From: Podarcis cretensis | Taxonomy: Eukaryota | Reading direction: 5' to 3' | Assembly: GCA_951804945.1 (NCBI GenBank) | Contig: OX638151.1 | Span: 56,296,001-56,360,000 of the forward strand | Length of the DNA: 64,000 nt | Shown: piece after piece, positions 2,914 to 64,000 of the stretch | How the letters are laid out: every line of letters starts with the position of its first letter | Position numbering within the stretch: the stretch's first letter is position 1 | The notes under the pieces: generated by a model | What the model was told of the DNA's origin: nothing | What the model saw: the letters and a program-made list of their open reading frames with translations, nothing else | Database searches by the model: none | Program-made: the position numbers and the translations under genes

Positions 2914-2964
2914 TACAATGTTCTGGGCCCCTAAAATCCTGTTGACAGCCTTCATTCTATTAAT

Positions 2965-4629
2965 TTTTTTTTTTTAATGATATTTATTAAGATTTTCCAT
3001 AAAATCTTTTCCCCAATAACATCTTTTCAGGACTTCCCCTCCCCTCCCCCTCCTGTATTCCAATTCTTACAAATAAACAAAAAAAAATTTCAACAAGTTC
3101 TTATCCCAAATTTAAACTTATTATCATTGACTCAATTTTAAAAATATTTTCCCATCCCCTAAAATCGACCTGTTCCCTTCCGCGAGTTCCCCCCTTTAAT
3201 ATGCAATACAGATTACAATAGAAGAAAAATTAACAAAAAATAATAATTTTACGCCCTTTGGATTCCAATTTTCCCTCCCCCCTTTCCCGGTTGCGTTCCC
3301 AATGTTCCTCGACGTCTGATATCTTCCTGGAGTTCCCACATCTCTCTAAACCATAGTCCTTTCCCAGTCATCTTTAGTTTCGAATGTCCAATCTTGGAAG
3401 GAGTCTGTCTCAAAAAAGGCCCATTTCTTCCATCTAGATTTTTATATCTAGGGGTGAAAGCTCCAATTTTATTCCTTTAAACCTGTCAAATCTGGATGTC
3501 CCAAATGTTCCCACTTCCAACTTTGTCCAGTTCTTATTATTTTTGTTGTTCTTGTTGATCTCACTCCTCCTTTTCTTTTTCTTTTTCCCTGCTCTCCTGC
3601 ACAAATGTTCCAATTCCAAAAGCTTCTAATTCCTCTGCAGAGGCTTGTTATTCAAGAACAAAACATTACGTCAAGTCCTTTTCATTCTTCAATAGATAAA
3701 TCTATTGTCTCCTTTAGTGCGTAGACCTCTGTAGACAAAATAGTGTTCCATTTCTGCAGTTTCCCAGGAGATAGAAAGTTCTGGTCAAATTCCACGCCAA
3801 CAATACTTGTAATGTCCCTCGGCTCCTCTAAGTGGATTGCAATAACTAAATTCCCTTCCAGATCACGTCCACCAGTCAAAATAACTTGTTATTCCTTGTT
3901 TGTAACAATTTGTATCCAATTTATAACAAATGTAACCGGCAAAGTCCTCGTAACAAAGATCTCTATTTTATTCTTCCGCTTTGACAGCTCTTTGACAGCT
4001 GTCAAAACCTCTATTTCTCTTCTCCCGGCGCTCTCACAAATCGCTCCCAGGGTTCCGGGGGGGGGGGTGGTTGCTTTTTAATTCAATTCCACCTTTCTCC
4101 TCCAGCTCAGTCTTATGATTTTCCCTCGCGAAGTTAATAACTTTGTCAAAATAGGGTTGCACTCGATCTTAGTTGTCAAATCCTTTGCTTTAACTCTTCT
4201 ACAACAGGGGGGGGCTGACTTCCTTTTTGCGCCTCCCCCGCTCGCTCCGAATTTTTTAAAAAAAATTTATCCCCCTTTTTAGTCCAGGTTCCGATTACTC
4301 ACGGGTTATTCTTTTAAGTCCAGATTTTCAATAGAAGAAGTCAGCGCTCTCCGTCGAATGGCATGCGGCTTCGCTCGGCAGGGGAAGCGAAGGACTCAAA
4401 GCACCACTACCCCCCTGTCACCCGCTCCGCAGCCTTTAAAAAGGCTCCTTCGCGGGTCGGGGGGCGCAAAAGGTGCCAGCCGAGTCACCATGTCCATGGG
4501 TTTCAGCGCCCATGGTTTTTGAGGGTCCCCGCGTCGCCGGTGCGGTAGGACCCAACCCCTGCCGAGCAGGCTCCCTCTGGAGCTCAGAGGGAGTCCGCCA
4601 TTCGGCGATGGCGCCAACCCGGAAGTCCC
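2965..4629 (-). mobile_element. Full-length non-autonomous L1-type (HAL1-like) retroposon, copy A, with decayed ORF
   Basis: Perfect 17-bp TSD GCCTTCATTCTATTAAT (2948-2964 / 4630-4646). Minus-strand AATAAA (2983-2988) followed by poly(A). 5' end GGGACTTCCGGGTTGGCGCCAT. CpG-rich leader homologous to 10522-10854. No RT or EN motifs seen. Confidence 0.85.
3290..3804 (-). pseudogene. Frameshifted remnant of the ORF that is intact in copy B
   Basis: Manual frame-joining gives NLTRTFYLLG(fs)KLQKWNTILSTEVYALKETIDLSIEE, EELEAFGIGTFVQ and ELQEDIRR. These match copy B ALNRTVYLLGKLHKQIDVMATNIDILGTKVGISIE, EEIGASGAFGLGRTVKQ and ELRTLDIRS. The 3' boundary is approximate. Confidence 0.7.
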
Positions 4630-4858
4630 GCCTTCATTCTATTAATAAAGCCACATAACACTGCTGACTCAACACAATCCTAGAATCTATTTCACATATA
4701 CTACTACCAATCCAGGATTCCCCATCCTAATGCCTGTACAACTTATTGCTGTATATTTGTTGTTGTTGTTGCTGCTTTGTCTGAATGCATTACTTTTGCA
4801 TTTGTTTGCTTAATTTCAATGTGTGAGTTTCAGCCCCATTTTCATTTTGAATTTTCTA

Positions 4859-7866: not shown

Positions 7867-8222
7867 CAGTGGTGCCTCGCAAGATGAAATTAATCCGTTC
7901 CGTGAGGCTCTTCGTATAGCGGTTTTTTCGTCTTGCGAAGCAAGCCCATTGACAGCTTAGCGGATTAGCGCTATTAGCGGTTTAGCGGCTTTTAGCGGAT
8001 CAGCTGATAAGCGGCTTATCAGCGGATCAGCTGATAAGCGGCTTAGGGTTTAGGAAAAGGGGGGGGGAAGGGGAAAAACCCCGCAGGAACTCGCAAGACA
8101 TTTTCGTCTTGCAAAGCAAGCCTATAGGGAAATTCGTTTTGCGAAGCGCGTCCAAAACGGAAAACCCTTTCGTCTAGCAGGTTTTCCGTCTTGCGAGGCG
8201 TTCGTCTTGCGGGGTACCACTG
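7867..8222. mobile_element. Tigger-like MITE with internal tandem palindromes
   Basis: TA-CAGTGGTGCCTCGCAAGA ... TCTTGCGGGGTACCACTG-TA; internal repeats GCGGATCAGCTGATAAGCGGCTTA. Confidence 0.85.
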
Positions 8223-8679
8223 TACAGAATGGGTTTATCAGTTTCCTTAGCCCCTTTTCGGAAGCAGACTATTGACACGCACGGGCTGCTCTAAACTAGA
8301 TTTCAGTGTCATGCTTGACTGGTGTTCACCACTTCTCCAGCCACAGTTCTACTTCTGCATATGAGGACAACTTCCATCGCCAACATCCAGAGGCACATAT
8401 CTAACTATATGCCAACCATACAAAAGCTGTAGTATGTTAAACTGAATTGTTGCATGTTCAGATATGTAATTTTATACATGGTGGGAGCAGACATCATCTA
8501 ACACACGAGAAAACTGTGGCTAAAGAAGCAGGCATCTAATGTAGGCCTTAGTAAGCATTTTAGTTACTTTTAAAATATTTTATTTTAATGAAGTAACCGA
8601 GTCTTCCCCAACCTGGTATCCTCCAGAGGTTTTGGATTCTCAGCTTTCAACAGCCTCCATCAGCATGGCCAATGGTCTA

Positions 8680-10854
8680 TTTATTTATTTTTTAAAGATT
8701 TTTATTAAAATTTTAAAGGTTACATAAGTCACAACAAAAAAACACCCAATTAACCCCCCAAAAAAGCAATACATAAAAACAAGTCACATCAAAAGAAAAA
8801 GATAAAAAATGGAAAACAGACAAAAAACAAGCAAAAAAATTGCATAAAATCCAGAGAAAAAGAAAAAAAAGAAAAAACAACAAATCAAACCTTTACATAA
8901 CTTTCCTTCTTTAACTTATTTCCTTGACCTCCTCACACCTCCCCTCTTTGTATTCTGATTCAGTTAGATATTCCAGCAAATCCTTCATCCTTGTTTTTAT
9001 CCTAATAATTTATCTTAATATACTGTAATTTTAAATTCTCTTCTTTCACCAATTAATCGTCCATTTTTACTTTATTTAATCTTATTTCTCATTAAAACTA
9101 ATATATTGAACTTAATCTCTTAAGACATTTCCCCTAGGGTCATAAAAATTTCATTCCACAATTTTTCCATTTCTCATTATTATTATTATTTTTTAAAAAA
9201 TTCCTTATATACACTTTAAATTCCCAATTTCTTTCCTCCGTCTCCCCTCCCCAGCCCCTGCCCTCAGTTCCATCAACCTCCCAGCGTCCATCAACCTGGA
9301 GATCTGATATCCAAGGTTCTTAACTCTTCTTCATTTCCCTTCTGCCGATCTTCTTGATAAACTTTGGTGCTAAAAAGCAGATCTCGGGGGAGCTCCATCC
9401 CAACGATGGTTATATTCTTTCTTGACAAGTCTGCCAAGTTTCCATAATTAAAGCTAGGGCCCATAAAATATTCCAAACCTTGTTTCACAGTTCTTCCAAG
9501 TCCAAAGGCCCCCGAAGCTCCAATCTCCTCCTGGCTCAAATTCATATTCCAAAAGTCATTTGATCCCTGCATAAAGGGATCTCTCCACTTTTCCTTTTCC
9601 AGATCAGGCCAGGCACCCAACTTCAAAAACTGGCTTCTCCTAATTACAGTCATATGAGGCCTCAAGTTGTAATCCTCCATTTGCCTCTTTAGGGTTAAAG
9701 CTCCCCCATATTTTGCTTTATATTCAACAACAGCAACAACAGCAACTTTCTCCTTCTCTAATTCATCGATTTGTTCAGTTAAGAAAGGTTCTTGTGCCGG
9801 GTTCTTGTCGACTTCTATGCTGATGCCCACTTTTGTTCCCAAGATATCAATATTAGTAGCCATGACATCTATCTGTTTATGCAGCTTTCCCAGCAGATAA
9901 ACTGTCCTATTCAGAGCAGACGCTACTTCTTCCTTTACCGACATTCTTAAGAAATTCAAGGTCAAAACTAGTTTCTCACAGTCCTTATCTTCAGAGTAAT
10001 TTCGCAGCTGCATACTTGTAACAATGTCCCAAAACTCCCTCTAGAGGGAAGCAGTCTCAATTTGTATCAATCCTTTCCAGCACAATTCCAAAAGTAAATT
10101 AATAACAGTTCCCAGTTACTTTTTCTTCTTTTTAAGTGCAGAAGCAGACAATAGAAACAATGTCTTTCTTTTAAAGCTAGCTGTCAAATTAATGCCAACT
10201 GTCAAATTAAAGCTAGCTGTCAAGTTAAAGCTAGCTGTCAAATTGTCCTGTTTACCGTCGATGGACTTTTTGCAAACCGTTCCCAGGTTCAGAGACGTAA
10301 TGCTTCAATCTTTAATTTTCCACCTTCTCCTGCAAGTTCACTTGGTCAGAATTGATAGTTTCAATCAGTGGAGTTTTAATCCTTTACGCGAGACTTTCCA
10401 AAACCTTAGTTAGTAACTACTTTGCTTCAGTCTATTTACAGAAAGGGAAGGTGGACTTCCTGTTTAGACCTTCCCCGTTCGGTGCCAAATTAAATTATTT
10501 AAAAGCTCAATTTCGCGTTCTACTCACGGGTTGTTGTTTAGAATCCAATTGTCCACAGGAAAAAAGTCAGCGCTCTCCGACAGCGGCAATGCGGCTTCGC
10601 TCCGTGAAATAAGCGGTCAATTCAAAGCACCGCGCCTCTCACCCCACATCGCTCCGGATTCCCGGTACCGGGTCTCCCCACGAGTAGGTGGGCGCAGAAG
10701 GTGCCAGCCGAATCCCAGGTTCACAGACTTCTCCCGTCTGTGATTTCTAAGGATCTCCGCCATCGCCGTGGCGGACAGACCCTGTTTTTCATGGAGCCGG
10801 TTCCTCCCGATCAGAGGAGCTCCGCCATTGCCGGAGGCGCTAACCCGGAAGTCC
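8680..10854 (-). mobile_element. Full-length non-autonomous L1-type (HAL1-like) retroposon, copy B, with intact ORF
   Basis: Perfect 19-bp TSD CAGCATGGCCAATGGTCTA (8661-8679 / 10855-10873). Minus-strand AATAAA (8701-8706) and A-rich tail. 5' end GGACTTCCGGGTTAGCGCC. About 840-nt leader, one 240-aa ORF, about 610-nt U-rich 3'UTR, no RT. Confidence 0.88.
9291..10013 (-). CDS. 240-aa retroposon-encoded protein, possibly a divergent or truncated L1 ORF1p derivative
   Basis: ATG-to-TGA ORF inside a TSD-bounded element, homologous to the decayed frame in copy A and preceded by 633 nt with no ATG. SRKNITIVGM weakly resembles the ORF1p RRM-start motif (R.N[IL]R[IL].G[LV]PE). Confidence 0.6.
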   Translation of the reverse strand: MQLRNYSEDKDCEKLVLTLNFLRMSVKEEVASALNRTVYLLGKLHKQIDVMATNIDILGTKVGISIEVDKNPAQEPFLTEQIDELEKEKVAVVAVVEYKAKYGGALTLKRQMEDYNLRPHMTVIRRSQFLKLGAWPDLEKEKWRDPFMQGSNDFWNMNLSQEEIGASGAFGLGRTVKQGLEYFMGPSFNYGNLADLSRKNITIVGMELPRDLLFSTKVYQEDRQKGNEEELRTLDIRSPG

Positions 10855-11214
10855 CAGCATGGCCAATGGTCTAGAATAGGAGGGATTCTTTTTCATAGCA
10901 AGTGGTCACCAGCTTGGAGAAGGCTAGTGTAACCATCTGGAAAGGTTAGCATAACTATTCACAGGCAAGTTCCACAAGACCTAGTCAAAAACACAATACA
11001 AAGTATTGTGTTACAAAACACCTCACCCTATTCAAAATAATGGTCTCTGTCGGGCCAAAATTGGTTCTGTATCAACTGGAGGTAGCCAATTTGGAAATAG
11101 CATTGGGTAATTTCACAGAACACATGCAAGTAGGTCTGTGCAACTGGTCTGGCCGGATCCCGAACCAAATCAGACAGACCAGGGAAGCCCTGGCTCCCCC
11201 CAGGCTGTCAATGG

Positions 11215-24800: not shown

Positions 24801-27546
24801 TTATTATTTTTTGCCTTCATTACATTGTTATTTTAAAAGAACTACCAGTTTACCTCCATTATCTTCTTAATTACATTTATCAGTTGGAAAGATGTTAAAT
24901 TGTAATAAAATGGGGGGGGGGGGAAATACTAATGATCAATGTTCATCACAAATACTATGTAAAGTATCAAAGAAAAGAATGTTGCCAGAATATGTATTAT
25001 AAATCACATCCTACATAATAGTACCAAACAGATATTTGCTACTACAAGCAGGATGTGAACAAGTTAAGTGCAAACTATGTTCATTCCAAGATTCATAAGG
25101 ACATTATGATTTTGTTCTCATTCCAATAAATAATAAATAACTGTAACACCTATTGGGGCTAAATAAGACACAACAGTAACACGCATCTACAATCCTCCTT
25201 GCTATGCCTTTTCTACCTATTAAAGCTATATGTTTTAAATAGTCTATTGTTTAAAACAAAGGAGACAAAGCAAATCTTTTAAAATTGATTATGAGATTAC
25301 ACATACACATCTTCATTACCTAATGGTTTCAACTAACCCTTTTGTCTCAGAAAATTCAAAAGAGTAAAAGATTAACTCACTAAATTCTTACTTCCCCGTA
25401 AAGGAAAAAAAAAGGAAGAGAAACAAAAACATTAGAGAAACACACTGTAGACAATAGACAAATATGTTTTCAGTCTGTTCAAGGTTCAAATTATTTTTCT
25501 CAGGTTAACCCATCAGTTACTACTGCAGTCACTGTCTACTCCAGGACATAATCATTTTAAAATGTCTTTTACTCTGAAACCAAGCTTTGAGAGTCCCCAA
25601 AGACTGTATGTGAGAATTTATTTCTTCTACCACTGTTCCTGAAAGCATATTCAAAGATTTAACAGTCCATAATAACAGCATCTTGTTAAGGATGGAAAAG
25701 GTCCCCAATAAAACTTAAATATATTGTTACTCCTTTAACATAATTCACTTCCTTAAAAATCAAAGCATAAGCTTGTATTTTATTTTTTATATCAACAGAA
25801 CTAAATGAAGCATGATGCCTGCTGTTTCTAATCAATGAAATCCAAATGCAAAACAGATTTTTAAAAAATATCTATGGTTTTCTGGATTTTTAAAAAATAA
25901 TTTTAAACAAAAAAAGTGACAACATTATATAGCCTTGGTTAATACAAGAGGTCACATATCTAAAGATATTGGAGACACAAACCTCATAACAAGTACACAA
26001 ATAAAGCTAATGCCACTAAATATATATTGCATTAAAAATAAATAATGTATAATACTATGCAGAATGAGTATGAATGTAGAATTCAGTCAAACAAATGCAG
26101 ATTACAGCATAGATTTTCCACAAGATGTTCTACTACAATTACACTTGTTTAAAAAAGCCCTAATGGTTTAAATAAAAAGCAATTGTTAAAAGATTTATCC
26201 ATGTCATCAAAATAAAGAAAATCTTCAGCGTTGATTAACAAGAAAACTACACATAAATTTAAACAGTGAAGATCCAATGATCACCTAAAACATTCTTTTT
26301 TAAAAAAAGATTGTCTTTTTAACATAACAGTCCCTTGCTTGCTGAATCCTTCTTAACCTCAACTATCAAAAGATGCCTGCCAATTATTTCAGCTTCTTCT
26401 AAGAATGCGTAACCTTGCATCTGTGAGCAAAAGTGCTCAGTTATTATTTGTGGCAAGAATTTTTGTGACTGTACTGCTCAGCAATTCTATTTACATCAGC
26501 AATGCTAAATGCCCAATGGTGAGAGAGGAGCCAATCAGATGGCAGATTAGATGTCAACTCAGAGGCAGCTGTCTGGAGACTATTACAGCCAGTTTACCTC
26601 CACAATTCAAATTCCAAACCTTGCAAAAGAGATCAAGTCACTCTTTAGGCTCAGACTGCCGAGCAAGAAACATCAAGAGTTCTGAGTTATTTCCTATGGT
26701 TTTAAAGGTGGCAAAAAGACAACTTTTTACGAACATCGTCCAGACATGATCTGATGCCTACTGAATTGGCAATTCACAGCCTATAACTGATCAGAAATAT
26801 TGTGTAGCCTCCAGAAACACTAACTGTTGATCTCTTGCAATACTCACGCCTTTTTTGTTAGATTCTCCCCCATCAACCAACGAAGCGTAAAGTTTGCCCG
26901 TAAGGGGAGAGCAAACACAGGGAATATCTAATTATAACATTCCACATATTTTTAAACTATTTTTATATTGGTTGTGAGGACATGAGAAACATGCCAAAAG
27001 AGAAAGTCATTTGAACAACCAGGATGTGAAGCTCTTTATACTACTGTGGAGCATAGATACAACATATTTAAACTGTTTTTGCTCAGTTTCAATATAAAAC
27101 TCTATCCAAGCAACACTATTTTCTAATAACCCAAACGAGAAATAGATCAAGACAGGAAAGGAAAGAGTGTGATTTTGCAAGCTCTGCTGGTTATGGCATT
27201 GGTTCCTCCCTTTCCCATTCCAAAGTGATTTTCCTCTGGGCCTTGTGTGTTCGGATTTCTAATAAGTCTAGAGTAGGAGCACTGGGTGGGGTACAGTGGG
27301 TCTTGTGTATTGTTCAACTATATAAATGAAATGGTCTGATTTTTAGGAGGAAAGTCATCCCCCCTCCCCATGATGTCTTTCTGACCTAATCAGAGTCAGA
27401 CACTGTGCATTATCCAACCCTGTGAGGGAGGGCAGCAAGGAGTTGAGATGGAGTAGGAGAAAAGTAAATTAGAAAGAAAGTAAAGACAGACACACACAGG
27501 CAACTGAAACAACACACTGCTTGCTCTTTTGGGTTCTTATTGTTAC

Positions 27547-29307
27547 CTGGCTCCTGCTGATGGTCTGTCCAGTGTTTCCAGGGCTCATAGCCGGGTGATT
27601 TCTTTGTTGTGCTGCTGCCCAGGCTGGGTTTGCACCTCCATACTGGGAACCCATGTCCTTGCCCATGCCTGCTGCTGCTGCCTGCTGGCTTCCCGGAGCG
27701 GCTGCTGCTGCTGCTACTCCCTGAGCCTGCTGCTGCTGCGATGGGGCAGCAGTGGGGTTGGCATAATCGGGGTAGCCAGTGCCATAGCTCCTCATCATGG
27801 GGCTGGGGGAAGTGAGCAGCTGGTTCAAGGTTGGGGTGGCCCCAGACGGGTGTTGGTTTTGCCCGGAGAACCTTTGGAAGCCCGCAGACCCCGACGCCTT
27901 GCCGAGGCTGCCTCCTCCTCCGCCCGGGCCCAGCATCATACCCTGCTGGTGCTGCCTGGGGGAGTTCAGCACCCCGAAGGCAGACGAGGAGCCCCCATAG
28001 CCGCCGCCGCCTCCTCCTCCTCCTCCTCCTCCCGCCGCTGCTGCTGCTGCTGCTGCAGCCGCCGCTCCTGCTCCTCCTCCAGCGTTGCTGCCGCCGCCAG
28101 GCCGGCCGTAGGCGCCCGCGTAGTGGTTGTACTGGCTGTTGGCGTAGCCTTCGTGCGAGTTGGGCAGGGGGTCCATGCTGTTGGGGGCCGCCGCGGGGTG
28201 CATTAGCCCCATCCCGGGGCTTTGTTGTCCGCCATGTTGATCAAAGCAAGGCCCAGCCCGGCTCGCTGAGGAGGCGCCTCCGCTGCTGCTGCTGCTGCCG
28301 CCGCCAGCGCTGCCGTAATAGCTATTAAACTCCGAGACACCCACCGCTGAGGGCCCGCCGCCGCCGCCGCCTCCTCCAGCGCCTCCGCCGCTGCCCGCTC
28401 CCTGAGGTGGTGGCGGCGGCTGCCCGCTCAAAGGTCCCAAGCCGGGGTGGTCGTAGCGGCTGCCGAGGTGCTGCTCGCCCATTTTGTCCGGCGGCGTCGC
28501 CGCCTCTTCGTCGCCGCCGCCGCCGCCTTTATTCGCCAAGGGCTGGGACTGTGGCCGGCTCTGGGGCTCGGCCTGTCCCCCTAAGCCGCTGTCTTTTCCT
28601 CCATGTTGCTGCTCCATGTCTGCGCTGCTGGGCTGAGCAGCGCCGCCACCGCCGCCGCCGTTGTTGTTGCTGCCGCCGCCGCAGCCGCCGTTGTTGTTAT
28701 TCTGCATCGGATGGTGCTGAGGCGGCGGCTGTTGCTGGAATTGATTTAGCTGTTGGTGTGGAAGTGCATGGTGGTGGTGGTGGTGGTGGTGAGCATGGGG
28801 GTGCTGGGCATGGAGGTGAGCTGGGTGCTGGTGCTGGGCATGGGGGTGGTGGGAAGGTGCGGCGGTGGCGGCGGCGGCAGGGTGATCGCCTCCGACGCTT
28901 TTCAACTTGTGGTTGGGGAGCAGCCCTGTCTCCATAGCCGGGGTAGAAGAAGAAGAGGAGGAGGAAGGTAAACCCGACGAGCTTCCAGCTTCTTTCAGAA
29001 CCGATTCCGAGGAAGAACCGCTGTTGTTATTACCGGTGGCGGCGGCAGAAGTTGCATTATTGGCCATGTTCAGTTCATTATGGTGGTGGAGGAGATGGTG
29101 GTCTACATTATTCAAGCCGCCGCCGCCGCTGCTGCTGCTGCTGTTAGTCCCATCTACGACCCCCAAGAGGGAGCCCGGTCCAGCAGCTCCTGCGGTGCCT
29201 GCCACGGGACCCCCAGAGTTGAGATCCTGGCTTAAGTTGCCCGGCAAACTCGGGGTTTTGCCTTTCTTGTTCGCACCCGCCGGAGCCGCTGCTACTTGCG
29301 CGGCCAT
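27547..29307 (-). CDS. ARID1B: AT-rich interactive domain-containing protein 1B (BAF250B), first coding exon (587 codons; possible in-frame ATG two codons upstream at 29313)
   Basis: Diagnostic ARID1B N-terminal peptides [77 protein letters not shown] and [15 protein letters not shown]...RSQ. The exon ends CAG|GTAACA (phase 0) where human exon 1 ends. Start context ATCATGG. The next exon is not in the window. Confidence 0.95.
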
Positions 29308-29490
29308 GATCATTGCAACATTGCAAGGAGGTGGGGGAGAGAAATCAATTAATTCCCCTCCAGCCTGGAAAAAAATGGGCAAAACAAATGGGGGTGGGGA
29401 GGGGGAAAACCCCCCAAAAGCCCCACAATTCAGGAAACGAACGATTTAACAAAAAAGCCTGCTGATCATTCCCTCCGCGCGCGCGCGCAC
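27800..29490. promoter_or_regulatory. CpG island over ARID1B exon 1
   Basis: Dense CpG and GCC/GCT/CCT triplet runs against an AT-rich, CpG-poor background; alternating (CG)n(CA)n tract at ~29476-29498. Confidence 0.8.
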
Positions 29491-62705: not shown

Positions 62706-64000
62706 TCTGTTACCTCCGAGGATGTGGACAGGCTGCTTGGACGAGTGAAACCGACCACCTGTCTTCTTGATCCTTGCCCATCCTGGCTGATAAAAGCGAG
62801 CCGGGAAGGGCTGGGCGATGGGCTTTGCGGGGTGGTGAATGCTTCCCTCTGTGAGGGAGCCTTCCCAGACCCGCTGAAAGAGGCGGTCATTAAACCGCTT
62901 CTTAAAAAAACATCTTTAGACCCGGCCAATTTGGCCAACTATCGCCCAGTCTCAAATCTTCCATTCTTGGGCAAGGTGATTGAGCGGGTGGTTGCTGAAC
63001 AACTCCAAGCACGCCTGGAGGAAACGGACCATTTGGATCCCTTCCAATCGGGATTCAGGCCTCACCATGGGACTGAAACTGCCTTGGTCGCGCTGGTTGA
63101 TGATCTCCGGCGGGCTAGGGACAAAGGTGAGAGCTGTTTCCTAGTTCTGCTGGATCTCTCAGCGGCCTTTGACACCATCGACCATAACATCCTTCTGGAC
63201 CGTCTAGAGGGGCTGGGAGCTGGGGGCACTGTTATACAGTGGTTCCGCTCCTTCCTCCTGGGCCGTGTTCAGAAAGTGGTGGTGGGGGATGAGTGTTCAG
63301 ACCCTTGGGCCCTCACTTGTGGGGTACCTCAGGGTTCCGTCCTCTCCCCCATGCTTTTTAACATCTATATGAAGCCGCTGGGAGAGATCATCAGGGGGTT
63401 TGGACTGGGTGTTCATCAGTATGCAGATGACACCCAGCTCTACCTCTCCTTTAAATCAGAACCAGTGAAGGCGGTGAAGGTCCTGTGTGAGTGCCTGGAG
63501 GCGGTTGGAGGTTGGATGGCGGCTAACAGATTGAGGTTGAATCCTGACAAGACAGAAGTACTGTTTTTGGGGGACAGGAGGCGGGCAGGTGTGGAGGATT
63601 CCCTGGTCCTGAATGGGGTAACTGTGCCCCTGAAGGACCAGGTGCGCAGCCTGGGAGTCATTTTGGACTCACAGCTGTCCATGGAGGCGCAGGTTAACTC
63701 TGTGTCCAGGGCAGCTGTCTACCAGCTCCACCTGGTACGCAGGCTAAGACCCTACCTTCCCGCGGACTGTCTCGCCAGAGTGGTGCATGCTCTGGTTATC
63801 TCACGCTTGGACTACTGCAACGCGCTCTACGTGGGGCTACCTTTGAAGGTGACCCGGAAACTGCAATTAATCCAGAATGCGGCAGCTAGACTGGTGACTG
63901 GGAGTGGCCGCCGGGACCACATAACACCGGTTCTGAGAGATCTGCACTGGCTCCCAGTACGTTTCCGAGCACGATTCAAAGTGTTGGTGCTGACCTTTAA
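62706..64000 (+). mobile_element. Young 5'-truncated L2 LINE with an uninterrupted reverse transcriptase frame running off the window
   Basis: Manual translation gives about 431 codons with no stop: NYRPVSNLPFLGKVIERVV, FQSGFRPHHGTETAL, LLDLSAAFDTIDH, GVPQGSVLSPMLFNIYM, YADD (63420-63431), SRLDYCN, HITPVLRDLHWLP. Confidence 0.95.

What the first reader, a model, noticed from the sequence alone, without database searches (positions are those of the whole stretch)
8680..10854. Candidate undescribed system: RT-less, protein-coding, L1-mobilised retroposon family (HAL1-like) with an unusual 240-aa ORF
Seen: a complete 2175-bp unit with a perfect 19-bp TSD, AATAAA plus A-rich tail, a CpG-rich GGACTTCCGG 5' end and exactly one long ORF with no RT or endonuclease; a diverged relative sits 4 kb away. 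Established: long TSD plus poly(A) indicates target-primed reverse transcription by L1-type machinery, and ORF1-only HAL1 elements are known. Unusual: the protein does not read like a normal ORF1p. It has a short amphipathic N-terminal segment (LNRTVYLLGKLHKQIDVMATNIDIL), an unfamiliar middle, and an RRM-start-like motif (SRKNITIVGM) only about 40 aa before the stop, so the RRM and CTD appear absent. Inference: a parasite of L1 encoding a remodelled ORF1p or novel accessory protein that could co-assemble with or interfere with helper L1 RNPs. I cannot tell whether it is already in Repbase or Dfam.
Basis: partly seen in the sequence, partly recalled or inferred. Interest (0 to 1): 0.85.

Follow-up and report, generated by a model that had tools for sequence, protein, structure and literature searches.

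The report
Lizard L1-dependent retroposon with novel ORF
This is a young, complete copy of a lizard "half-L1"-style jumping element that has an L1-type promoter head and poly(A) tail but no reverse transcriptase. Its single gene encodes a small coiled-coil protein that is kept in diverged relatives and matches no named family, which is a modest but real novelty for transposon biology.

Summary
Window 8680-10854 (minus strand) is a 2175-bp retroposed unit with a perfect 19-bp target-site duplication, AATAAA, an A-rich tail, a CpG-rich head and one 240-aa ORF. A second TSD-flanked copy lies at 2965-4629.

- **L1 link:** the head carries GACTTCCGG...ATGGCG, the architecture published for Anolis clade-1 L1 5' termini. 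So the unit is an L1-derived, L1-dependent non-autonomous element.
- **Not a recognisable ORF1p:** Pfam, a PDB profile search, phmmer over 1.84 billion proteins and profile searches found no RRM or CTD. They found only about ten unnamed relatives of 154-215 aa, one of them a "hypothetical protein" of Podarcis lilfordi.
- **What the relatives share:** the start (M24 of this ORF), a five-heptad N-terminal coiled coil and a C-terminal motif ...RDLRASDxRxPG-stop, down to 20-35% identity. This argues that the frame is maintained.
it is not conserved in the family.
- **Copy A:** it carries only frameshifted remnants of the ORF.

First readers of this scan flagged similar 1.1-2.2-kb units elsewhere in this genome. 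My verdict is a new variant of a known kind (HAL1-like), of moderate interest.

The parts
8661..8679 (.). Target-site duplication, copy next to the element's 3' end (19 bp)
   Evidence: Identical to 10855-10873; the flanking bases differ
8680..8693 (-). A-rich tail (12 A of 14 on the element strand)
   Evidence: Read directly
8701..8706 (-). AATAAA polyadenylation signal
   Evidence: Read directly. Copy A has the same signal 10 nt before its A-run.
8694..9290 (-). 3' UTR of about 600 nt, very C-poor (6% C) with A-rich low-complexity runs
   Evidence: Composition, TRF. No Pfam hit in its stop-free pieces.
9291..10013 (-). Single ORF of 240 aa including the stop. The family-conserved start is M24 (codon 9942-9944), which gives a 217-aa protein.
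   Evidence: No Pfam or PDB match. Relatives P0001-P0011.
9816..9944 (-). N-terminal heptad-repeat helix (residues 24-66 of the ORF), a predicted coiled coil
   Evidence: Conserved hydrophobic columns show a 3.5-residue periodicity. AF2 predicts a helix at 3-45 with pLDDT 74-84. A homotrimer model scores 0.32 against a best control of 0.01.
9294..9350 (-). Conserved C-terminal motif (K/R)G-x-ER-D/E-L-R-A/T-S/L-D-x-R-x-P-G, then the stop
   Evidence: Alignments A3 and A5
10014..10854 (-). 5' leader of 841 nt. The first ~400 nt are CpG-island-like. Blocks are conserved with copy A.
10823..10854 (-). L1-type head: terminal G + GACTTCCGG, a 16-nt spacer, then ATGGCG (a YY1-box-like core)
   Evidence: Compared with the lizard clade-1 L1 consensus GACTTCCGGTG-N8-ATGGCG in PMC5381506.
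10171..10244 (-). 18-bp tandem repeat, 4.1 copies, inside the leader (contains TGACAGCT)
   Evidence: TRF. Copy A has a related 11-bp x2 repeat at 3979-4000.
10855..10873 (.). Target-site duplication, copy next to the element's 5' end (19 bp)
2965..4629 (-). Copy A: a diverged family member of 1665 bp. It has the same head, a related 3' end and an A11-12 tail. It holds only co-linear frameshifted remnants of the ORF (about 3888-3233).
2948..2964 (.). TSD of copy A (17 bp), identical to 4630-4646
4630..4646 (.). TSD of copy A, second copy

Best explanation
Window 8680-10854 (minus strand) is a young, full-length insertion of a non-autonomous poly(A) retroposon family of a lizard genome. The family carries an L1 (lizard clade-1-type) 5' UTR and promoter but no ORF2.

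**Proposed mechanism**
1. RNA polymerase II starts at the first G of the element, driven by the internal CpG-rich head (an ETS-like GACTTCCGG plus a YY1-like ATGGCG box). Every full-length copy therefore carries its own promoter. This is inferred from identical 5' ends and from the published L1 head.
2. The transcript is polyadenylated at AATAAA. The signal and tail are shown.
3. An L1 ORF2p supplied in trans uses the poly(A) end for target-primed reverse transcription, which gives the 17-19-bp TSDs. The hallmarks are shown; the helper is inferred.
4. The single ORF encodes a family-specific protein of about 200-217 aa. It has a five-heptad N-terminal coiled coil that probably self-associates in parallel register, and a conserved C-terminal motif. 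It has no RRM or CTD.

I think the protein most likely acts like the oligomerising half of an ORF1p. It would assemble on or near its own mRNA, or join helper ORF1p assemblies, and so raise the RNA's access to ORF2p. This last step is inference only. Whether the ORF descends from L1 ORF1 or was acquired is unresolved.
For: - Perfect TSDs, AATAAA and A-tails in two independent copies.
- Both copies begin at the same motif with 1-2 extra G, and the head occurs only at these two places.
- The head architecture matches the consensus published for Anolis clade-1 L1 5' termini, including the long, CpG-rich 5' UTR that is conserved across families (PMC5381506).
- The copies are 36% diverged in the leader yet both have perfect TSDs. 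That points to distinct recently active lineages, as described for lizard L1.
- There is no RT, EN, RRM or CTD in any frame, and no tRNA or Rfam head.
- ORF relatives of 154-215 aa share the start, the stop and the motifs at 20-63% identity.
- Site conservation within one clade predicts conservation in the other (rho 0.185, permutation p 0.014).
- Coiled coil: heptad periodicity peaks at 3.5 residues and the AF2 helix has pLDDT 74-84. The ESMFold2 homotrimer scores 0.32 against a best control of 0.01, with runs agreeing in at least 48% of contacts and partner pLDDT of at least 51. That mark was reached by 21 of 30 solved homo-pairs and 0 of 23 single chains.
- First-reader notes list many similar 1.1-2.2-kb units in this genome. 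These are unchecked leads.
Against: - No autonomous L1 with this head or tail could be examined, because none lies in the window.
- B's target site (ATTC/TAGA on the element strand) is a poor match to the TT/AAAA preference, although A's (CTTT/ATTAAT) is good.
- The spacer between the two head motifs is 16-17 nt, against 10 in the Anolis consensus.
- Copy A, and non-coding look-alikes noted elsewhere, suggest the ORF is dispensable for mobility.
- Open relatives were found through gene calls, which see only open frames. That is ascertainment bias, and no dN/dS was possible.
- Apart from the first helix, the structure models have pLDDT below 50.
- The homotrimer pass is marginal, and the calibration for that test was on dimers.
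Confidence: 0.7

Rival explanations
1. The element is as described, but the ORF is a decaying relic. It could be a remnant of ORF1 or a chance frame. It is open in this copy only because the insertion is young, and it has no function in mobilisation.
For: Copy A has the same head and tail, a perfect TSD and an intact A-run, but only frameshifted remnants of the ORF. P0003 and P0006 are truncated or frameshifted versions. Non-coding look-alikes are noted elsewhere in the genome. No fold could be predicted beyond one helix.
Against: Eight or more relatives at 20-63% identity keep the same start, the same stop and 200-217 open codons. Staying open has a chance of about 1e-7 per frame at this composition. 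Conservation is concentrated on heptad a/d positions and on shared motifs. It is also correlated between two clades.
Confidence: 0.15
2. These are processed retrocopies of a lineage-specific cellular gene, such as the one annotated as a hypothetical protein in Podarcis lilfordi. They would be made by L1 like any processed pseudogene, and would not be a self-propagating retroposon family.
For: An mRNA-like layout with a CpG-island 5' end, one ORF, AATAAA and poly(A). One relative is annotated as a protein-coding gene on a chromosome-scale contig. No similarity to L1 proteins was found.
Against: The extreme 5' end matches the published L1 clade-1 head motif. Two copies 36% apart both have perfect TSDs, so several diverged sources were active recently. 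Retrocopies of a gene normally lose the promoter, whereas here the promoter-like head is inside every copy. Phmmer over 1.84 billion proteins found no homologue outside the small unnamed family.
Confidence: 0.08
3. This is a one-off internally deleted L1 copy and not a family.
For: Internally deleted L1 copies are common, and the head is L1-like.
Against: A second independent TSD-flanked copy has the same architecture 4 kb away. Relatives of the ORF with the same ends occur in other assemblies, including another species.
Confidence: 0.02

Closest known systems
HAL1 (half-L1) non-autonomous L1 derivatives of mammals (Smit 1999; Bao & Jurka 2010, as cited in PMC5753468)
   Same: An L1-derived 5' region, a single ORF, no ORF2, a poly(A) tail, long TSDs and presumed trans-mobilisation by L1. 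Several lineages exist.
   Different: HAL1 encodes a recognisable ORF1p with an RRM and CTD. This ORF has neither and shows no detectable similarity to any ORF1p. HAL1 is described from mammals, and this family is in lizards.
Clade-1 L1 families of the lizard Anolis carolinensis (Boissinot & Sookdeo 2016, PMC5381506)
   Same: A 5' terminus of GACTTCCGG followed by ATGGCG. A long (~0.8 kb or more) CpG-rich 5' UTR that is more conserved between families than the ORFs. Co-existing diverged lineages with young insertions. An A-rich, C-poor sense strand.
   Different: There is no ORF2. The ORF lacks the RRM and CTD. The spacer between the head motifs is 16-17 nt, not 10. The ORF is 32% A, against about 43% reported for lizard L1 ORFs.
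L1 ORF1p
   Same: An N-terminal parallel coiled coil predicted to self-associate, encoded as the first ORF behind an L1 head.
   Different: The coiled coil has only about 5 heptads. No RhxxhE motif, RRM or CTD is present. The protein is acidic overall (pI 5.6), so no nucleic-acid-binding module is evident.
SVA and other Pol II-transcribed, L1-mobilised non-autonomous retroposons; processed retrogenes
   Same: Capped, polyadenylated RNAs copied by L1 ORF2p in trans, with TSDs and A-tails.
   Different: SVA is non-coding and composite. Retrogenes lack an internal promoter and do not form amplifying lineages.

Membership tests
L1-mobilised (TPRT) poly(A) retroposon | Target-site duplication of about 7-20 bp flanking the insert | tested here: met
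   19/19 for B and 17/17 for A
L1-mobilised (TPRT) poly(A) retroposon | 3' poly(A) or A-rich tail preceded by AATAAA | tested here: met
   B has AATAAA plus a 14-nt tail with 12 A. A has AATAAA plus A11-12.
L1-mobilised (TPRT) poly(A) retroposon | Insertion at a TT/AAAA-like endonuclease site | tested here: inconclusive
   A's site, CTTT/ATTAAT, fits. B's site, ATTC/TAGACC, fits poorly. Two sites are too few.
L1-mobilised (TPRT) poly(A) retroposon | Actual dependence on an L1 ORF2p | not testable with these tools
   Needs a retrotransposition assay or co-phylogeny with the L1 families of this genome.
L1-derived element (lizard clade 1 head) | 5' terminus GACTTCCGG..ATGGCG and a long CpG-rich 5' UTR | tested here: met
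   Both copies carry it, against 0 expected by chance. The consensus comes from PMC5381506. The spacer is 16-17 nt, not 10.
HAL1 (half-L1) | Lacks ORF2 (EN/RT) | tested here: met
   No Pfam hit in the ORF or in other stop-free pieces. The unit is only 2.2 kb.
HAL1 (half-L1) | Encodes a bona fide L1 ORF1p (Transposase_22 RRM + CTD) | tested here: not met
   Seven members gave 0 Pfam hits to the ORF1p families at E<=10. The PDB profile search gave no ORF1p. Phmmer and profile searches found no ORF1p.
L1 ORF1p | Coiled-coil oligomerisation domain | tested here: met
   Heptad periodicity and a confident helix. The homotrimer model scores 0.32 against a best control of 0.01, a marginal pass. This is a prediction only.
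L1 ORF1p | RRM and C-terminal domain with RNA-binding residues | tested here: not met
SINE | Pol III head derived from tRNA, 7SL or 5S | tested here: not met
   ARAGORN found 0 genes. Rfam found 0 matches at gathering score.
Processed pseudogene of a host gene | An identifiable intron-containing parent gene | not testable with these tools
Only an unnamed hypothetical protein of Podarcis lilfordi is on record.

The most novel reading that the evidence does not exclude
Lizards harbour a clade of L1 parasites that replaced, or reduced beyond recognition, ORF1p with a small acidic coiled-coil protein carrying a conserved C-terminal motif. Selection maintains this protein across subfamilies and species. 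It would work as an adaptor that plugs the parasite RNA into helper L1 RNPs, for instance by hetero-oligomerising with helper ORF1p, or that competes with them. That would make it a protein-level hyperparasite of L1 and not a passive passenger.
Probability: 0.25. Interest if true: 0.7.

Novelty: new variant of a known kind. Interest (0 to 1): 0.5.

Why it matters
Protein-coding non-autonomous L1 derivatives (HAL1) are described from mammals, and they carry a normal ORF1p. This lizard family keeps an L1 head but encodes a conserved coiled-coil protein without RNA-binding domains. That makes it a natural experiment on three questions: what the first ORF of a LINE must do, whether oligomerisation alone can confer cis-preference or access to ORF2p, and how parasites of L1 evolve in genomes where many L1 lineages coexist. 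The family also matters for annotation. At least one copy is already deposited as a 'hypothetical protein' gene in a lizard genome.

Tried and rejected
**Searches that found no named family**
- Pfam on the ORF, on 7 family members and on 10 other stop-free pieces of both copies gave nothing.
- The PDB profile search gave no ORF1p. Its best hit was the first 42 residues of neuroguidin at E 0.099. I treat this as coiled-coil noise.
- The ESM Atlas gave only unnamed phage and bacterial clusters at 0.93, which is uninformative.
- AF2 gave mean pLDDT 33.6 with 2 sequences and 44.0 with 9. That is too poor for a fold search, so I ran none.
- A motif scan of the window for L1 ORF1 or ORF2 found only an L2/CR1-type RT fragment near 63420. 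No in-window L1 was available for comparison.
- tblastn of all family proteins against copy A found nothing at E<=1. A family HMM found only weak co-linear pieces, with a best E of 0.06.
- A metagenome contig scan for DNA of relatives found none.
- Rfam and tRNA scans were empty.

As a result there are no reads, no expression data, no species identification, no DNA of relatives and no dN/dS.

**Literature**
- Searches for HAL1-like or ORF1-only elements in squamates, Anolis or Podarcis found no description.
- Bao & Jurka 2010 is not held in the library.

**Rejected on the evidence**
- The RRM-start reading of SRKNITIVGM is not conserved in the family.
- I considered a 2A-like reading of the C-terminal ...R-x-P-G-stop. 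It lacks the NPGP core and is followed by a stop codon.

Full report
**1. Observation**

The unit lies on the minus strand at 8680-10854 and is 2175 bp long.
- A 19-bp direct repeat flanks it exactly, at 8661-8679 and 10855-10873. The bases outside the repeat differ.
- Only six direct repeats of 17 bp or more with 0.3-8 kb spacing exist in the whole window. Two of them are the flanks of this unit and of its relative.
- On the element strand the 3' end carries AATAAA (8701-8706) and a 14-nt A-rich tail with 12 A.
- The 5' end reads G+GACTTCCGG. The first 400 nt have CpG observed/expected of 0.9-1.3.
- There is one ORF of 240 aa at 9291-10013. At this composition, 240 stop-free codons have a chance of about 1.6e-8.

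**2. The relative (copy A)**

Copy A lies at 2965-4629 on the minus strand and is 1665 bp long.
- It has a perfect 17-bp TSD (2948-2964 and 4630-4646), AATAAA, a run of 11-12 A and the same head.
- The two copies are 64% identical over the first ~630 nt, in conserved blocks, and they share the 3' terminus.
- Copy A has no open frame. tblastn with all family proteins finds nothing. A family HMM and inspection find only weak, co-linear remnants in shifting frames between about 3888 and 3233.
- Two copies that are 36% apart yet both have perfect TSDs cannot differ by age alone. They come from different, recently active source lineages.

**3. L1 affiliation**

Boissinot & Sookdeo 2016 (PMC5381506) describe the clade-1 L1 families of Anolis as follows.
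- The 5' extremity has the consensus GACTTCCGGTG-N8-ATGGCG.
- The 5' UTRs are long, CpG-rich and more conserved between families than the ORFs.
- Many diverged lineages are active side by side.

Both copies here start with 1-2 G followed by GACTTCCGG, a 16-17-nt spacer and ATGGCG. The motif pair occurs nowhere else in the window, and 0 occurrences are expected by chance.

The variable number of leading G fits reverse transcription of capped full-length Pol II transcripts (established knowledge of L1 insertions). The sense strand is A-rich and C-poor: the ORF is 32% A and 15% C, and the 3' UTR is 6% C. No tRNA, 7SL or 5S head is present.

Taken with the TSD length and the A-tails, the unit is best read as an L1-derived element copied by L1-type target-primed reverse transcription. 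No autonomous L1 lies in this window; the only RT fragment, near 63420, is L2/CR1-like. The helper is therefore inferred and not shown.

**4. The protein**

No named family matches it.
- Pfam gives nothing at E<=10 for the ORF or for seven relatives.
- A profile search against all PDB sequences, which include L1 ORF1p structures, gives no ORF1p. The best hit is E 0.099 to the N-terminal helix of neuroguidin, which is not significant.
- Phmmer over 1.84 billion representatives, with no length filter, finds six proteins, all unnamed Logan gene calls of 154-215 aa.
- Profile searches add P0010, a 201-aa 'hypothetical predicted protein' of Podarcis lilfordi on a 123-Mb contig, and P0011.
- No ORF1p appears even at E<=10.

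The relatives form two clades that are 20-35% identical to each other. They share three features:
- the start, which corresponds to M24 of this ORF, so residues 1-23 are specific to this copy;
- the stop;
- a C-terminal motif (K/R)G-x-ER-D-L-R-A-S-D-x-R-x-P-G.

The other members have unrelated, partly acidic residues at that position.

Columns conserved within one clade tend to be conserved within the other (Spearman 0.185, permutation p 0.014). This is modest evidence for site-specific constraint. I could not compute dN/dS because no DNA of relatives was obtainable.

**5. Structure**

- The conserved hydrophobic columns of the first ~45 residues follow a 3-4 spacing, with a sharp 3.5-residue periodicity over about five heptads.
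- AF2 with nine sequences predicts a helix at 3-45 with pLDDT 74-84. Everything else is below 50, so I did not run a fold search.
- An ESMFold2 homotrimer of residues 1-66, counted from M24, scored 0.32 against a best control of 0.01. The runs agree in at least 48% of contacts, and the partner pLDDT is at least 51.
- That mark was reached by 21 of 30 proteins solved as homo-pairs and by 0 of 23 solved as single chains. The calibration was on dimers and mostly on microbes.
- The contacts are parallel and in register at the conserved a/d positions.
- The model supports self-association but does not show it.
- The protein is acidic (pI 5.6) and has no evident nucleic-acid-binding module.

**6. 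Mechanism**

| Step | Status |
|---|---|
| Retroposition hallmarks | shown |
| Head shared with L1 | shown |
| ORF family with conserved ends | shown |
| Internal Pol II promoter | inferred |
| Trans-use of L1 ORF2p | inferred |
| Oligomerisation of the protein | inferred |
| Role of the protein | speculative |

My preferred reading is that the protein provides the oligomerising function of an ORF1p. It would either act on its own RNA or join helper ORF1p assemblies, and so improve access to ORF2p.

Copy A, together with the non-coding look-alikes that first readers noted elsewhere (unchecked), shows that some lineages move without the ORF. The ORF is therefore at most an enhancer of mobility and not a requirement.

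**7. Comparison and novelty**

The architecture is that of HAL1. But the defining HAL1 feature, a bona fide ORF1p, was tested and not met. I therefore file this as HAL1-like in how it works and not as a member of that family.

Literature searches found no description of such elements in squamates. Repbase and Dfam could not be queried, so 'undescribed' remains open. First readers of this scan have flagged at least a dozen similar 1.1-2.2-kb RT-less units on other pieces of this genome, so the family is probably abundant.

**8. Limits**

- As a result read laying could not be used, and the species, expression and genomic context of the relatives are unknown.
- I did not send the host exon at 27469-29382 to any search.
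The remnants in copy A are only described.

Noticed in passing
window 27469-29382 (-): A large, GC-rich, low-complexity coding exon with poly-His, Gly, Ala and Ser runs and a [12 protein letters not shown] stretch. From memory it looks like the first exon of ARID1B. If so, both retroposon copies lie in its intron 1 in sense orientation, each bringing an AATAAA. I did not search with it.
   Followed up: no
window about 63350-63500 (+): A reverse-transcriptase fragment with ...HQYADDTQLY..., which is an L2/CR1-type motif and not L1. It is the only RT-like stretch found in the window.
   Followed up: no
window 10521-10530 and 4296-4305 (-): A CCC|GTGAGTA block, shaped like a consensus 5' splice site, is perfectly conserved in the leaders of both copies. 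In B a good acceptor-like CTTCCCTCTAG|AG lies about 30 nt before the ORF, around window 10040-10055. This raises the possibility of a spliced leader or U1 binding. It might also relate to the shorter 1.1-1.4-kb look-alike families noted elsewhere.
   Followed up: no
window 10171-10244 (B) and 3979-4000 (A), (-): Both leaders hold tandem copies of a motif containing TGACAGCT, at the same relative position just before the ORF: 18 bp x4.1 in B and 11 bp x2 in A. This could be a reiterated factor-binding site.
   Followed up: no
window 35842 / 39522 and 51690 / 57624: Two further exact direct repeats of 17-20 bp, 3.7 and 5.9 kb apart. They may be copies of another interspersed repeat or the TSDs of other insertions.
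   Followed up: no
window 7957-8046 (+): A minisatellite with units TTAGCGGA (8 bp) and a 27-bp unit, lying between the two retroposon copies.
   Followed up: no
P0010 (Podarcis lilfordi, NCBI/UniRef): A member of this retroposon ORF family is deposited as a 'hypothetical predicted protein' gene in a chromosome-scale lizard assembly. It is probably a transposon ORF annotated as a host gene.
   Followed up: partly
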